The notes under the pieces are model-generated. The model had not been told where the DNA came from, made no database searches, and saw only the letters and a program-made list of their open reading frames with translations. Both the position numbers and the translations under genes were made by a program. From the sequence record NC_021529.2: a stretch of DNA of 64,000 nt, one strand, 5' to 3'. Position 1 is the stretch's first letter; each line of letters begins with the position of its first letter. This document shows positions 22,839-40,005 of the stretch, piece by piece.

Positions 22839-23363
22839 CTATTTTCTTCGACTTGCTTTATTTGCTTTTCGTTTCGCTCTTCTAAGCTCTTTACGTTTAG
22901 CAATCTTATCAGCACGTCGAACAGCATCATAATCCGCTGCACAAGACGCTGCAAACGCATCTGGCTTGAATACGGGCTCTTGACCCACATAACCCAGAAT
23001 AGTTCCCTTAGCTTCGTTATACGCGATATGAGACCGGTGTGCAGGGTCTGGGTTGATATCGACGTGAACTTCGAAGCCTCGCGGGCCACACATTGGTTTA
23101 ACTCTCAGTGCAGTTTCACCAGCTTTATAAACTTCAGTCATCAAACGACTTCGAATACCATCTTTGCTAGACATATAAGCAGGTTCAGTTTCGACAGATT
23201 TGAAAACTTGAGCACCTTTACTACCTTCAAGATGTATGATTATCACAGTAGCGTAACTGATCATGTCACTTTTACGCTTGCTATCACACCCGACGTATAT
23301 AGTACTATTCGGATGACTGTTGTTGATAGCTGTTTCTATTGCTTCCCAATCGAACATTTTCAC
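22839..23363 (-). CDS. RNase H-like YkuK (DUF458) family protein
   Basis: IYVGCDS, RLMTEV, EVHVDIN, KPDAFAAS.AAD. Confidence 0.8.
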   Translation of the reverse strand: MKMFDWEAIETAINNSHPNSTIYVGCDSKRKSDMISYATVIIIHLEGSKGAQVFKSVETEPAYMSSKDGIRSRLMTEVYKAGETALRVKPMCGPRGFEVHVDINPDPAHRSHIAYNEAKGTILGYVGQEPVFKPDAFAASCAADYDAVRRADKIAKRKELRRAKRKANKASRRK

Positions 23364-23409: not shown

Positions 23410-24846
23410 TTAAAAACTGTATCGGTCAACGCCGACAGTTTTCAGCATGATCTTGACTGGCTCAAGTTCACCACCTAACAGTGAAGTTAGAATTGATGGA
23501 CTACAACCCGAAACCAGTGCAGTACCTGCTTCACCTGATTTAACAGGAACGTTGTCTAAACGACCGCGAATGTTCCAGAACACTAGTTGAGGCATTTCAT
23601 AACCAGCACGTGCGTACTTAGCTTTGATTGCGTCAAAGTTTGCAACTTCGCCACGACCATACCAACCACCACCGGTGTTTGCTTGATCGAATTCCATGTC
23701 ACTCATGATAAGCAACTTGGTTGGCATATCTTCTTGTGAAAGATTTGCACGACTCGCACGCTCTAAAAGAACGTCGAAACATTTCCCGATGTTAGTGCTC
23801 ATGTCTTCGCCTGAGCGATTCATGTTGTCAAGACGCTCTTTTAGTGAGCTACCGCGCAACTGGTGGAAGTGCGGATTACTTGAGAACGAAATGAATTGAT
23901 CTTTGAAGATACCTTCATTGCGCTCAGCAACGTAAATGCCTAGAGACATTGCTACTTGCTTACAAGTAACTGCGTTAGCAGCGTGTACACCGTTGATCGG
24001 CGTGCTCATAGAGCCAGACACGTCTACAACAGGGATGATACGCTCATCAGAGCCTTCCATGTAGTTCGGTAGAGCTTTCCATTGCTCGTTCGCTACAGAT
24101 GCGTTACCGCGTTCTACGCTTTTAACAACATCGTATGGGAACAATGCACCAGCGTTGATCTTCGCTTCGCCTTTTTGAAGTGATTCGATGTAGTTTGTGT
24201 AACGAGTTTCAGCGTTACGACCAAATGCTTTTTGATAACGAGCAGACGCTACAGAAGGCAACTTACCGAAGTCGATTGCATCCCAATCTTTCGCACACAT
24301 CTTTTGTTCAACAGTGTCAGACAAAAGAGCAAGAATCTTACGCCACTGCTTAGAAGTCACGCCAAGAGACTTGATTGTGCGCTTGAACACGTGACCGTTT
24401 TTGCTGTTTTCGCGAGGGAACCACTTAGCAGCAAGACCATTCTTGTCGTTGACAATCGCATTTGACCACATAGTGATCGCGTCTTTTTCAAGTTTAGTAC
24501 CGAAAGCAACGATTAAGTCATCGAAACGACCTAATTCTGGTACTTTTGACATTACAGCTCGTGCCACTTCTGGCTGTTCATTACAAAGTTTAGCGAACAA
24601 AGTACGGAAAGTACCACGTTCACCCGCACCACCTCGAACGTCACGAGACCATAGCAAGATGCGAGTCGCTAGTTCTGGGTTTTCTGCAAACGCACGACCG
24701 AACAGTGTTTTAGACTGATCGTTGCCACGCATAGCAGCAATACCGAAGAACAAGTTTAGACACTCGTTACCTGAAGTGCTGTGGGTAACTGCACCGTTTG
24801 CTGTACGTGAATCGTTTGATTGCATAGCGTTCATAAATGCTGACAT
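23410..24846 (-). CDS. DUF2828-type helical + vWA protein (Ro60/TROVE-like architecture)
   Basis: RDVRGGAGER, GRFDD, AAKWFPRE, VVDVSGSM MIDAS, SDMEFD, VFWN; GAGG SD before ATG 24846. Confidence 0.8.
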   Translation of the reverse strand: MSAFMNAMQSNDSRTANGAVTHSTSGNECLNLFFGIAAMRGNDQSKTLFGRAFAENPELATRILLWSRDVRGGAGERGTFRTLFAKLCNEQPEVARAVMSKVPELGRFDDLIVAFGTKLEKDAITMWSNAIVNDKNGLAAKWFPRENSKNGHVFKRTIKSLGVTSKQWRKILALLSDTVEQKMCAKDWDAIDFGKLPSVASARYQKAFGRNAETRYTNYIESLQKGEAKINAGALFPYDVVKSVERGNASVANEQWKALPNYMEGSDERIIPVVDVSGSMSTPINGVHAANAVTCKQVAMSLGIYVAERNEGIFKDQFISFSSNPHFHQLRGSSLKERLDNMNRSGEDMSTNIGKCFDVLLERASRANLSQEDMPTKLLIMSDMEFDQANTGGGWYGRGEVANFDAIKAKYARAGYEMPQLVFWNIRGRLDNVPVKSGEAGTALVSGCSPSILTSLLGGELEPVKIMLKTVGVDRYSF

Positions 24847-24882
24847 TGTTGATTTCCTCATATTAATTTGCTGTATAATGTC
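24842..24882 (-). promoter_or_regulatory. 5' UTR hairpin with ACAGCAA motif enclosing the SD and start codon
   Basis: GACATT-ATACAGCAAATTAAT-ATGAGG-AAATCAAC-AATGTC. Confidence 0.7.
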
Positions 24883-24894
24883 GTTGATGTGATG

Positions 24895-24923
24895 ATTATA
24901 CACGGGTTTAAACCCGTATAAAC
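24895..24923 (-). promoter_or_regulatory. T4-like early promoter with a palindromic spacer
   Basis: GTTTAT-17-TATAAT; ACGGGTTTAAACCCGT at 24902-24917. Confidence 0.7.
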
Positions 24924-27587: not shown

Positions 27588-27858
27588 AGACATTCGAGAA
27601 GTGTTTTTTCGTCTTTCCTTAAATCTCATTTGACTAGCTTGTTTCTTATACAAGCAAGCATTTGCGTATTCAGCGCAACGCCAATTCCGTTTAACGATAC
27701 GAAAATCGTCGAAGTCATTTCCTACTTCACGAGAACACCGTTCTCTTAGCTGTCAGGCTTACGTCATCACTGAGAATGCAGCTAGTACGCCCCGTTCGTT
27801 ACCGCTAGATAACTATTAATTTTAGCTTCTTTGATTAGAATATTGCTGTACAATGTCT
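27588..27858 (-). ncRNA. Long ACAGCAA-family structured RNA 1
   Basis: AGACATT/AATGTCT closing stem, TACAGCAA, GACGAAAAAACACTTC shared with 31537-31746. Confidence 0.6.
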
Positions 27859-31536: not shown

Positions 31537-31746
31537 AGACAATACCGAAGTGTTTTTTCGTCTTTGACATGAATCGGAGTTGACTATCTTATTGGTTCTC
31601 AACAAGCAAATATCGTCTGTTTCAGCGACGCGCCTATCTGACTATTTCTAGACAGAGAGAATCTTTCCTTTCAAGCTGCACCGAAGCACTTCCCAGGTTA
31701 AGACAATCACCTTTTTAAGTAAGTAATTGGTTGCTGTATATTGTCT
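31537..31746 (-). ncRNA. Long ACAGCAA-family structured RNA 2
   Basis: AGACAATA/TATTGTCT closing stem, ATACAGCAACCAATT, GACGAAAAAACACTTC. Confidence 0.6.
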
Positions 31747-33110: not shown

Positions 33111-33223
33111 TGAGTGTCATTACTTGCGCCATCCGAGACTAGAGATACCAACTCTAAACGGGATTCGAACCCGAAACATTTCTTTTATCGGAAGAATTTG
33201 TAATTGTTTGCTGAAAACACTCA
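33111..33223 (-). ncRNA. ACAGCAA-family RNA enclosing an Ile-type anticodon arm and a T arm
   Basis: TGAGTGT/ACACTCA; CAGCAAACAATT; TTCTT-CCGATAA-AAGAA; CGGG-TTCGAAT-CCCG. Confidence 0.65.
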
Positions 33224-33231
33224 ATGGTATT

Positions 33232-34052: not shown

Positions 34053-34064
34053 ATTAAATTAAAC

Positions 34065-34123
34065 AGTAATCGTTTTTTGCTTTTTTAAAATAAAAGTTTT
34101 GTATTGTTTGCTGCAAGATTACT
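34065..34123 (-). ncRNA. Minimal ACAGCAA-family RNA with a Lys-type anticodon stem-loop
   Basis: AGTAATC/GATTACT; CAGCAAACAAT; CTTTT-ATTTTAA-AAAAG; CAAAAAAC. Confidence 0.6.
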
Positions 34124-34128
34124 TAAAC

Positions 34129-34526: not shown

Positions 34527-34536
34527 TTTATTCAAC

Positions 34537-34623
34537 AGCTTGCGTTCTTTGGTCTGTTTATCGCTGTCTGAGTCATGCCCGTCGAGCGATCAATAGATTA
34601 AGTATTTTTGCAGTATGCAAGCT
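34537..34623 (-). ncRNA. Variant ACAGCAA-family RNA
   Basis: AGCTTGC/GCAAGCT; ATACTGCAAAAAT; ATCGCT/AGCGAT hairpin; CAAAGAAC. Confidence 0.45.
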
Positions 34624-34628
34624 AAATC

Positions 34629-37440: not shown

Positions 37441-37556
37441 TGGTAGTCGGGGCTGGATTCGAACCAGCGACCACGTGCTTAACAGGCAATTGAAAGAGTG
37501 CTGGAGCGATACTTGACAGTATCATTCTTCGTGCTCTACCACTGAGCTACCCGACT
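37441..37556 (-). tRNA. tRNA-Asn(GTT) with a 41-nt insertion between nt 28 and 29
   Basis: Removing 37489-37529 gives a 75-nt cloverleaf with CGTGC/GCACG stem and CCA. Confidence 0.75.
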
Positions 37557-39341: not shown

Positions 39342-39456
39342 GAGGTGAAGTGCAGGACTCGAACCTGCGACATCCGGCGTGCATGTGAATGCAGCATGAA
39401 ATCTTATCAGACTTCTTTTTTGGGCCGGCGCTCTAACCAACTGAGCTAACTTCACC
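39342..39456 (-). ncRNA. tRNA-like RNA with a 45-nt two-hairpin insert replacing the anticodon loop
   Basis: Canonical D and T arms, CCGGC/GCCGG stem, G-1:C73, ends TCA. Confidence 0.65.
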
Positions 39457-39469
39457 ATTGTAAAAACAC

Positions 39470-39599
39470 ATTGATGCGGGTGCAGGATTCGAACCTGCGT
39501 CACGATCTTATGAATGATATGCGAATTGATTGCCGTACAGATTCTTAACAGAATCAGTTTTTTGCTACGTGTGCTGCCACTACACCAACCCGCATCAAT
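39470..39599 (-). ncRNA. tRNA-like RNA (CAT, 8-nt loop) with a 49-nt insertion at 28/29
   Basis: 12-bp terminal stem, D and T arms, TACGGCAATCAATT motif. Confidence 0.65.
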
Positions 39600-39867: not shown

Positions 39868-39990
39868 TGGTCGAGTGTAACAGAATCGAACTGTTCCCAC
39901 GATCTCCCTATGATATGCGTAAATTGGTTGCTGAATATAATCATGTCTGATTACAGTATGCTACGTGTGCTGCCACTACACCAACACTCG
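39868..39990 (-). tRNA. tRNA-Pro(AGG)-like with a 49-nt insertion at 28/29
   Basis: C1:G72, A73, CCA, loop ATAGGGA; 74-nt cloverleaf once the insert is removed. Confidence 0.7.
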
Positions 39991-40005
39991 ACCAATGTAC
40001 TCTCG

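What the first reader, a model, noticed from the sequence alone, without database searches (positions are those of the whole stretch)
24842..24882. The RNA motif sequesters the SD and start codon of the Ro60-like gene
Seen: a few nt after the promoter, the leader reads GACATT-ATACAGCAAATTAAT-ATGAGG-AAATCAAC-AATGTC. GACATT pairs with AATGTC, which contains the ATG, and the GAGG SD lies in the loop. It has the same layout as the elements in the tRNA cluster. Inference: translational autorepression by the protein, with the cluster RNAs titrating it. This is the strongest link between protein and RNA family.
Basis: partly seen in the sequence, partly recalled or inferred. Interest (0 to 1): 0.85.

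Follow-up and report, generated by a model that had tools for sequence, protein, structure and literature searches.

The report
mRNA leader mimics phage Y-like RNAs
The start of a Ro60-shaped phage gene carries a short copy of the end-helix and CAGCAA motif found on two neighbouring non-coding RNAs, which suggests (but does not prove) that the protein controls its own translation by binding an imitation of its RNA partners.

Summary
The window is Vibrio phage nt-1. The described sequence is there, on the minus strand: GACATT (24882-24877), ATA, CAGCAA, a loop holding the GAGG Shine-Dalgarno, then AATGTC (24847-24842), which contains the annotated ATG. On its own the hairpin is trivial (-1.4 kcal/mol, no better than shuffles), and the SD is unpaired.

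Comparative evidence shows it is not chance. The 15-nt motif GACAWTNNNCAGCAA occurs exactly three times in the window. The other two copies head two paralogous 210-280-nt non-coding RNAs (S, M) in the tRNA operon. Their 5' and 3' ends form the same helix, with compensatory changes.

The leader module persists in relatives down to 59% protein identity:
- one has a compensatory pair;
- two have a changed 5' arm that pairs next to the SD instead of at the ATG.

It is absent in homing-endonuclease alleles, in one relative, and in all homologues at 54% identity or less.

The protein (Pfam DUF2828+DUF7788) has a Ro60 fold in a predicted model. Autorepression by Y-RNA mimicry is therefore a reasonable model, but it is untested. 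No such RNAs or operator turned up in my literature searches or in Rfam.

The parts
24895..24922 (-). T4-type early promoter of the gene: -35 TTTATA at 24922-24917 and -10 TATAAT at 24900-24895. A covarying hairpin (24917-24902) sits in the spacer.
   Evidence: Promoter scan scored 10 of 12. GTTTAC...TATAAT is conserved in relatives, always 9-15 nt upstream of the 5' arm. The transcription start has not been mapped.
24877..24882 (-). 5' arm GACAUU of the leader helix.
   Evidence: It is invariant in 10 distinct leaders while its flanks vary. It is GACAUA in the P0013 contig and GAAAUU in D479 and the P0010 contig.
24868..24876 (-). 3-nt spacer AUA followed by the CAGCAA motif.
   Evidence: The spacing of 3 nt is the same as in the S and M RNAs. 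CAGCA is invariant in 13 aligned leaders.
24856..24859 (-). Shine-Dalgarno GAGG, unpaired inside the loop, 9 nt before the ATG.
24842..24847 (-). 3' arm AAUGUC, which contains the start codon (24846-24844).
   Evidence: 94.9% of cells paired over 13 leaders, with one compensatory pair.
23410..24846 (-). ORF169, a 478-aa protein that Pfam assigns to DUF2828+DUF7788. It has a Ro60-like fold (TROVE-type helical repeats plus a vWA domain with a DxSxS MIDAS motif).
   Evidence: Pfam, PHROG 850 'RNA-binding protein', AlphaFold2 pLDDT 80.6. Foldseek top 10 hits are all Ro60/TROVE, E 4e-8 to 2e-5, TM 0.53-0.58. D275, S277, S279, T351 and D383 are invariant.
27588..27858 (-). S RNA, a non-coding RNA directly after tRNA-Ser(GCU). 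Its 5' end is AGACAUU-GUA-CAGCAA (27858-27843) and its 3' arm is AAUGUCU (27594-27588). A terminator follows at 27573-27550.
   Evidence: The terminal helix is kept in 7 phages although the insert varies from 126 to 248 nt.
31537..31746 (-). M RNA, a paralogue of S. Its 5' end is AGACAAU-AUA-CAGCAA (31746-31731) and its 3' arm is AUUGUCU (31543-31537).
   Evidence: Relative to S and the leader, its helix carries a compensatory change at the sixth pair (U-A to A-U).
34055..34125 (-). W hairpin between tRNA-Trp and tRNA-Asn: AGUAAUC-UUG-CAGCAAACAA...GAUUACU. It has the same layout but different arms.
   Evidence: 97.6% paired, 4 of 7 pairs compensatory, 0 of 500 shuffles reach the covariation score.
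34529..34625 (-). Candidate second W-type element after tRNA-Tyr: AGCUUGC-AUA-CUGCAAAAA...GCAAGCU.
   Evidence: Found only by the covariance model built from W elements, at 14.3 bits and E = 1, which is not significant.

Best explanation
The leader of ORF169 carries a miniature copy of the module that closes two phage non-coding RNAs, S and M. That module is a 6-7-bp helix GACAUU/AAUGUC whose 5' strand runs, after exactly 3 nt, into single-stranded CAGCAA. In S and M the helix joins the two ends of a 210-280-nt RNA. This is the architecture of Y RNAs: a 5'-3' stem next to a conserved motif on the 5' strand.

In the mRNA, the 3' strand of the helix is the start codon itself. In two lineages it is instead the 6 nt directly after the SD. 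I infer that one trans-acting factor binds this module on S, M and the mRNA. The most likely factor is the Ro60-fold protein encoded right there. Bound to the mRNA, it would clamp an otherwise negligible helix inside the 30S binding site and repress its own translation. S and M (and perhaps the W-type hairpins) would compete for the protein, so synthesis would follow the amount of free protein.

Shown here: the shared module, its conservation and covariation, its position at the very 5' end of the mRNA over the initiation region, and the Ro60 fold of the protein. Inferred: that S and M are expressed as stable RNAs, that the protein binds any of these RNAs, and that binding represses translation.
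For: - The exact 15-nt motif occurs 3 times in 64 kb, all in one orientation. Allowing one mismatch there are 4 matches against 0.57 expected. There is no exact copy in another 50 kb of the genome.
- All three copies have complementary 3' arms.
- RNAalifold on 11 S and M RNAs keeps only the terminal helix: 77 of 77 cells paired and 2 pairs compensatory, despite inserts of 126-287 nt.
- G-U pairs in 1.081.O S and D479 M fit an RNA helix, not DNA inverted repeats.
- The leader module is conserved in 10 distinct leaders while flanking bases vary.
- The P0013 contig has GACAUA/UAUGUC, a compensatory change at the non-coding -1 position.
- D479 and the P0010 contig have GAAAUU pairing with GAUUUC next to the SD. 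In the P0010 contig the S RNA helix also changed, to AGAAAUU/AAUUUCU.
- Homing-endonuclease alleles lose the helix but still carry ACAGCAA abutting the AUG.
- The 5' arm is always 9-15 nt after the -10 element.
- W-type hairpins have the same layout with strongly covarying stems.
- The protein's fold matches Ro60, including the Ro60 of Thermus phage phiLo.
- Published Ro60 partners are RNAs encoded near the gene, with a 5'-3' stem flanking a conserved motif (PMC4201824; PMC12135203).
Against: - No experiment or expression data were available.
- The helix alone is -1.4 kcal/mol and no better than shuffles. All orthologous leaders fold weakly.
- The 3' arm is fixed by coding (AUG UCN), so its conservation carries little information. 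Formal covariation for the leader is one pair (43 of 500 shuffles reach it).
- The motif CAGCAA differs from the known Ro60 site GNCGAA/CGAA.
- The protein matches neither Pfam TROVE nor Ro60 at sequence-profile level.
- Twelve of 51 related phages live with a leader that lacks the helix.
- In D479 the leader arm (GAAAUU) differs from the M arm (GACAGU), so S and the leader do not always change together.
- A covariance model built from W elements alone finds the leader only at E = 1.8.
- Homologues at 54% identity or less show nothing comparable.
Confidence: 0.45

Rival explanations
1. The module is a recognition or processing signal for a different factor. That factor could be a host endoribonuclease (RNase E/G type) or the phage RNaseH-like DUF458 protein encoded directly downstream. 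It would define the ends of S and M after excision from the tRNA precursor, and on the mRNA it would control 5'-end trimming or stability rather than autoregulation by the Ro-like protein.
For: The modules sit exactly at the ends of S and M, 12-14 nt after a tRNA 3' end, and at the 5' end of the mRNA. A DUF458/RNaseH-like gene follows the DUF2828 gene in five of the eight metagenomic relatives fetched, and in CZ01 and phi-Grn1. GACAUU contains an A/U-rich stretch of the kind RNase E prefers (my own knowledge, not tested here).
Against: A 6-7-bp helix is too short for RNase III-type processing. The constant 3-nt spacing and the invariant CAGCAA look like a binding site rather than a cleavage site. 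Nothing ties the nuclease to the motif.
Confidence: 0.2
2. The 5' motif (GACAUU-NNN-CAGCAA) is functional as a single-stranded or 5'-terminal element, but its complementarity to the start codon is coincidental and no leader helix forms in vivo.
For: The hairpin is not more stable than shuffles. AAUGUC is dictated by the preceding A, the AUG and a serine codon. ATGTCA starts also occur in distant homologues that lack the motif. Homing-endonuclease alleles keep ACAGCAA without any helix.
Against: The chance of the exact 6-mer complement falling within about 40 nt is roughly 1%. The P0013 contig changes both partners. D479 and the P0010 contig changed the 5' arm and have a new partner beside the SD. 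S and M use the same helix.
Confidence: 0.15
3. The interaction is RNA-RNA in trans. The arms of S or M (AGACAUU and AAUGUCU) pair with the complementary arms of the leader, so that S and M act as antisense regulators or sponges of the mRNA without a need for the protein.
For: The arms are mutually complementary between molecules. In the P0010 contig both S and the leader carry GAAAUU, which keeps trans pairing possible.
Against: Only 6-7 nt are available, and they are already paired within S and M. In D479 the leader arm and the M arm differ. This model does not explain the conserved CAGCAA or the fixed spacing.
Confidence: 0.1
4. The motif is a DNA-level element. Its reverse complement, TTGCTGTATAATGTC, looks like an antisense -10 promoter element. 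Alternatively it could be a homing-endonuclease target or a terminal inverted repeat of a mobile element.
For: The reverse complement contains TATAAT in nt-1 and D479. A GIY-YIG endonuclease gene inserts exactly here in 12 related phages.
Against: The key -10 positions are not conserved among copies (TTTAAT, AAAAAT, GACACT). No -35 element was found by the scan. The distant 3' arms of S and M, their compensatory and G-U pairs, and their conserved syntenic positions are not explained.
Confidence: 0.05

Closest known systems
Ro60 (Rsr) with Y RNAs, including phage examples (YrlA next to phage Ro60 genes; Thermus phage phiLo Ro60 with Yrl1/Yrl2)
   Same: The protein has a ring-type helical-repeat plus vWA/MIDAS fold. 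The candidate partner RNAs are encoded a few kb upstream on the same strand. Each has a 5'-3' terminal stem with a conserved short motif on the 5' strand next to it (literature). They lie among tRNA and tRNA-like genes.
   Different: There is no Pfam TROVE hit and no sequence-profile similarity to Ro60. The motif is CAGCAA, not GNCGAA/CGAA. S and M have no detectable tRNA-like domain and no Rfam YrlA or Y_RNA hit. They are longer (210-280 nt against 80-130 nt). No operator in a Ro60 mRNA turned up in the papers searched.
Translational autoregulation by molecular mimicry (E. coli thrS operator imitating tRNA-Thr; ribosomal-protein operators imitating rRNA sites; T4 gp32, gp43 and RegA operators). 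Recalled from my own knowledge, not checked here.
   Same: A short element over the ribosome-binding site copies the sequence and shape of the protein's presumed primary RNA ligand, so free protein would shut off its own synthesis.
   Different: Here, binding and repression are not demonstrated. The mimic copies only the closing helix and the adjacent motif. The paired element shifts between the AUG and the SD flank in different lineages.
T4 species 1 and 2 RNAs (rnaC, rnaD) at the end of the T4 tRNA operon
   Same: They are stable small RNAs of unknown function in the same syntenic place (57B ... tRNA cluster ... small RNAs) as S in nt-1 and KVP40.
   Different: They have no GACAUU/CAGCAA module and no evident sequence similarity. 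They are shorter (119 and 139 nt).

Membership tests
Ro60 / TROVE protein family | Match to the TROVE domain model (Pfam PF05731), or sequence-level similarity to Ro60 | tested here: not met
   Pfam gives only DUF2828 and DUF7788. phmmer and a 30-sequence profile against PDB sequences give no significant Ro60 hit; the best TROVE E-value is 0.87, over the MIDAS region only.
Ro60 / TROVE protein family | Helical-repeat TROVE module followed by a vWA domain, matching solved Ro60 structures over the full length | tested here: met
   AlphaFold2 model with pLDDT 80.6 and pTM 0.80. The Foldseek top 10 hits are all Ro60/TROVE (9kop, 9l5y, 1yvr, 1yvp, 2i91, 9nep ...), E 4e-8 to 2e-5, TM 0.53-0.58, 505-570 aligned columns. 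Ring closure as such was not examined.
Ro60 / TROVE protein family | MIDAS motif (DxSxS ... T ... D) in the vWA domain | tested here: met
   D275-V-S277-G-S279, T351 and D383 are invariant in 30 homologues.
Ro60 / TROVE protein family | Binds Y RNA and misfolded RNA | not testable with these tools
   Needs biochemistry or RIP/CLIP.
Y RNA / YrlA (Rfam RF00019, RF02553), applied to the S and M RNAs | 5' and 3' ends form a terminal stem | tested here: met
   A 7-bp helix is kept in 11 of 11 S and M RNAs, with 2 pairs compensatory.
Y RNA / YrlA (Rfam RF00019, RF02553), applied to the S and M RNAs | Conserved Ro60-binding motif GNCGAAN0-1G (bacteria) or GGUCCGA (animals) on the 5' strand | tested here: not met
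   The 5' strand reads GACAUU-NNN-CAGCAA. The literature motif was taken from PMC4201824.
Y RNA / YrlA (Rfam RF00019, RF02553), applied to the S and M RNAs | Covariance-model match at or above the gathering score; tRNA-like domain | tested here: not met
   No Rfam hit on S or M at E up to 5. The only YrlA hit is 23.5 bits (gathering score 69), at 39430-39502, on a different tRNA-like RNA.
Y RNA / YrlA (Rfam RF00019, RF02553), applied to the S and M RNAs | Encoded close to the Ro60 gene | tested here: met
   S lies 3 kb and M 7 kb upstream of ORF169, on the same strand.
Translational operator by mimicry of the regulator's RNA ligand | The element overlaps the ribosome-binding site | tested here: met
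   The 3' arm is A+AUG+UC in 11 leader types and is the 6 nt after the SD in two.
Translational operator by mimicry of the regulator's RNA ligand | The element resembles another RNA that is a candidate primary ligand | tested here: met
   The leader has the same 15-nt 5' module, the same helix and the same 3-nt spacing as S and M.
Translational operator by mimicry of the regulator's RNA ligand | The encoded protein binds both RNAs and represses its own translation | not testable with these tools
   No binding, reporter or expression data were available.

The most novel reading that the evidence does not exclude
DUF2828 proteins returned more than 7,800 homologues in the protein search, apparently mostly from phage-like contigs, and often sit beside tRNA or tmRNA genes. 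They may be a large unrecognised branch of Ro60-like ring proteins with their own Y-like RNA partners. In KVP40-type phages those partners would be the S and M RNAs, and perhaps the W hairpins and tRNA-like RNAs carrying CAGCAA. The gene would be autoregulated by a Y-RNA mimic at its start codon. That would be the first operator of this kind for any Ro-family protein, and a direct handle on the RNA specificity of the whole family.
Probability: 0.35. Interest if true: 0.8.

Novelty: new variant of a known kind. Interest (0 to 1): 0.66.

Why it matters
DUF2828 is one of the larger phage protein families without a function. The few papers that mention it did not appear, from their titles and abstracts, to address its function. 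A leader element that copies the closing module of neighbouring non-coding RNAs gives a concrete and cheap hypothesis for what the protein binds: a helix, 3 nt, then CAGCAA. It identifies two new conserved RNAs in the tRNA operon of KVP40-type vibriophages. It would also extend both Ro60/Y-RNA biology and the principle of autoregulation by RNA mimicry to a new protein family. If the protein does not bind these RNAs, the S/M/W family still stands as unexplained conserved RNA structure in a well-studied phage group.

Tried and rejected
- Rfam at gathering score and at E up to 5 gave nothing on the leader, S or M. It found only tRNAs, one weak YrlA hit elsewhere and chance hits.
- An exact-pattern scan of IMG/VR for the leader module gave 51 hits, roughly what I estimate chance would give. 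Only KVP40 and VH7D precede a DUF2828 gene.
- The metagenome scan returned only homologues at 54% identity or less, so it added no clade members. None of their 63 distinct leaders has CWGCAA.
- A search for words shared between distant homologues' leaders and their own neighbourhoods found only promoter-like repeats.
- A loose 'stem + CWGCAH + stem' descriptor has a background rate of about 7%, so the layout alone is not significant.
- A covariance model trained on W elements ranks the leader 4th in the window, but at E = 1.8.
- The antisense-promoter reading was rejected because the -10 positions vary and the distant 3' arms are left unexplained.
- The upstream in-frame ATG (24862-24860) was rejected as the start: it is out of frame in KVP40 and has no SD.
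- The T4 rnaC and rnaD RNAs lack the motif.
- The tRNA-like RNAs A and B carry CAGCAAC, but there it is predicted to be paired, so I do not count them as the same module.
- Literature searches found nothing on DUF2828 function or on KVP40 small RNAs.
- The rest of the nt-1 genome (50001-62000 and 126001-247511) was not scanned.

Full report
**Origin and gene.** The window is Vibrio phage nt-1 (NC_021529.2), bases 62001-126000, at 100% identity. The gene in question is ORF169, on the minus strand at 23410-24846, annotated 'RNA-binding protein'. Pfam assigns it DUF2828 plus DUF7788, and PHROGs assigns phrog_850. It has no sequence-level similarity to any solved structure, either alone or as a 30-sequence profile. 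An AlphaFold2 model (pLDDT 80.6, pTM 0.80) matches Ro60/TROVE structures over its whole length. The ten best Foldseek hits are all Ro60/TROVE, including the Ro60 of Thermus phage phiLo and Xenopus Ro60 (E 4e-8 to 2e-5, TM 0.53-0.58). The vWA MIDAS residues are invariant in the family. 'Ro60-like' therefore holds for the fold but not for the Pfam family.

**The observation.** On the minus strand the leader reads GACATT (24882-24877), ATA, CAGCAA (24873-24868), ATTAATAT, GAGG (24859-24856), AAATCAAC, AATGTC (24847-24842), with the ATG at 24846-24844. A T4-type early promoter ends 12 nt before the 5' arm. The annotated start is supported by the conserved N-terminus. The upstream in-frame ATG is not conserved. 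The six-base-pair stem closes a 29-nt loop in which the SD is unpaired. The stem is worth only -1.4 kcal/mol, no better than shuffled sequence (z = +0.47), and the wider leader is not structured either. Taken alone, the hairpin is what chance would give, and it could not hinder a ribosome.

**Related elements in the window.**
- The 15-nt string GACAWTNNNCAGCAA occurs exactly three times in the window, all on the minus strand: the leader (L), 27857-27843 (S) and 31745-31731 (M). Allowing one mismatch there are 4 matches against 0.57 expected. There is no exact copy in the first 50 kb of the genome.
- S begins 12 nt after tRNA-Serine(GCU). Its arm AGACAUU pairs with AAUGUCU about 260 nt downstream, and a terminator follows.
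- M has AGACAAU pairing with AUUGUCU about 200 nt downstream.
- S and M are paralogues. They also share a 3' block (AUAGUCAA ... AAAGACGAAAAAACACUUC).
- For 11 S and M RNAs from seven phages, RNAalifold keeps exactly one consensus element, the 7-bp terminal helix. All 77 cells are paired and two pairs show compensatory changes, although the enclosed insert ranges from 126 to 287 nt. The occasional G-U pairs argue for RNA pairing rather than DNA inverted repeats.
- A third type, W, sits between tRNAs. It has the layout stem, 3-4 nt, C(A/U)GCAAACA, loop, stem, with unrelated arm sequences. Its stem is 97.6% paired across six phages, with 4 of 7 pairs compensatory and no shuffle reaching the covariation score.
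The match is most exact for S and M: same arm, same 3-nt spacer, same hexamer.

**Conservation of the leader module.** I collected leaders from phage records and from metagenomic contigs encoding proteins 59-93% identical to ORF169.
- Ten distinct leaders keep GACAUU-NNN-CAGCA(A/U) and AAUGUC over the AUG, while the bases around and between them vary. The loop ranges from 24 to 45 nt.
- The 5' arm always lies 9-15 nt after the -10 element, that is, at the very 5' end of the mRNA.
- The P0013 contig has GACAUA with UAUGUC. This is a compensatory change involving the non-coding base before the AUG.
- D479 and the P0010 contig have GAAAUU. This cannot pair with the start codon but pairs with GAUUUC directly after the SD.
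- In the P0010 contig the S RNA helix is also changed, to AGAAAUU/AAUUUCU. In D479, however, M keeps GACAGU and no S was found. S and the leader therefore change together in one genome only.
- Twelve of 51 related records carry a GIY-YIG homing-endonuclease gene upstream and a replaced leader. That leader has no helix, although it reads GGAGCUUACAGCAAUG, with the motif touching the start codon.
- The P0012 contig has neither the leader motif nor an S-type module after its tRNA-Serine.
- No homologue at 54% identity or less has the motif.
- Formal covariation for the leader helix is thin: 94.9% paired, one compensatory pair, 43 of 500 shuffles as good. This is expected, because the 3' arm is fixed by coding.

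**Most likely mechanism.** The shared module (a helix, a fixed spacer and an invariant single-stranded hexamer) looks like a protein-binding site. S and M have the general architecture of Y RNAs, which are described as a 5'-3' stem flanking a conserved motif, encoded next to Ro60 genes, also in phages (PMC4201824; PMC12135203). The simplest model is that the Ro60-fold protein binds this module on S and M. The copy on its own mRNA then acts as an operator: bound protein stabilises a helix that holds the start codon (or the SD flank) and blocks initiation, while S and M compete for the protein. This is the principle known from thrS, ribosomal-protein operons and T4 gp32/gp43/RegA (my own knowledge). 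I give it 0.45. The RNA homology and its functional conservation I hold at about 0.8. The identity of the binder and the regulatory outcome are inference only.

**Rival explanations.**
- The module is a processing or stability signal read by a nuclease. A DUF458/RNaseH-like gene is conserved just downstream.
- The 5' motif is functional, but its complementarity to the AUG is accidental.
- The S or M arms pair in trans with the leader arms.
- It is a DNA-level element. The reverse complement contains TATAAT, but its key positions vary and the distant 3' arms are not explained.

**Comparison and novelty.** The protein fails the sequence definition of TROVE but meets the fold and MIDAS criteria. 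S and M meet the terminal-stem and gene-proximity criteria of Y RNAs. They fail the binding-motif, tRNA-like-domain and Rfam criteria. T4's rnaC and rnaD occupy the same syntenic position but share no motif. I found no literature on DUF2828 function, on these RNAs, or on an operator in a Ro-family mRNA. I rate this a new variant of known kinds: a Ro/Y-RNA-like particle and autoregulation by mimicry. The S/M/W RNA family is a new set of conserved phage RNAs.

**Limits.** There are no expression or binding data. The transcription start is predicted, not mapped. Only 114 of 247 kb of nt-1 were scanned for the motif. The clade available for comparison is small, and part of the leader conservation may simply reflect relatedness.

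Noticed in passing
window 27588-27858 (-) and 31537-31746 (-): Two paralogous, unannotated non-coding RNAs (S and M) lie in the tRNA operon. Each is closed by a conserved 7-bp 5'/3' helix and shares a 3' block (AUAGUCAA...AAAGACGAAAAAACACUUC). They are conserved in 4-7 related phages and have no Rfam match.
   Followed up: yes
window 34055-34125 (-) and 34529-34625 (-): W-type hairpins sit between tRNA genes with the layout stem, 3 nt, C(A/U)GCAAACA, A/U-rich loop with an inner hairpin, stem. The stem covaries strongly across six phages. The second copy is only a weak covariance-model hit.
   Followed up: partly
window 39868-39991 (-) and 39471-39595 (-): Two 124-nt tRNA-like RNAs have acceptor, D and T arms and a roughly 50-nt insert in place of the anticodon arm, made of a covarying hairpin followed by UAUUCAGCAACC. 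In the consensus fold, 15 of 36 pairs show compensatory changes. KVP40 also annotates several 113-124-nt 'pseudo-tRNAs' in this part of the cluster; I did not map which correspond to these two.
   Followed up: partly
window 39344-39455 (-) and 37444-37556 (-): Two 112-113-nt sequences score as tRNA in Rfam (55.9 and 49.8 bits) but are not called by ARAGORN. They carry an insertion of about 40 nt in the anticodon-loop region. In D479 the counterpart insert contains a hairpin followed by GUUACAGCAAUUAC.
   Followed up: no
window 33150-33225 (-): CAGCAAACAAUUAC directly after tRNA-Gln is followed by what looks like a partial tRNA: an anticodon-type hairpin and a covarying T arm, with no acceptor or D arm.
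   Followed up: no
L082 863-1456 (CZ01); also L083, L084: A GIY-YIG homing-endonuclease gene is inserted on the opposite strand directly upstream of the DUF2828 gene in 12 of 51 related phages. The insertion replaces the leader and the first codons (MSAF becomes MTSLF). The same cassette sits in nt-1-like, KVP40-like and D525-like backgrounds.
   Followed up: partly
loci L020, L026, L033, L040, L041, L055, L064, L067, L070-L079: In unrelated phage lineages the DUF2828 gene often lies within 6 kb of a tRNA cluster or a tmRNA gene on the same strand (20 of 42 loci scanned). In some, the tRNA cluster starts about 170 nt after its stop codon.
   Followed up: partly
window 22839-23363 (-): A DUF458/YkuK RNaseH-like gene directly follows the DUF2828 gene. 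This pairing is conserved in metagenomic relatives down to 59% identity.
   Followed up: no
window 24902-24917 (-): A hairpin (ACGGGUUUAAACCCGU) lies in the spacer between the -35 and -10 elements of the gene's promoter. Its sequence differs in each relative but stays self-complementary, so it may be the terminator of the upstream gene overlapping the promoter.
   Followed up: no
window 24798-24806 (-): GUACAGCAAAC occurs again inside the coding region (codons for T-A-N, which are conserved residues). It is not conserved in VH7D (CAGUAA), so it is probably a by-product of coding.
   Followed up: partly
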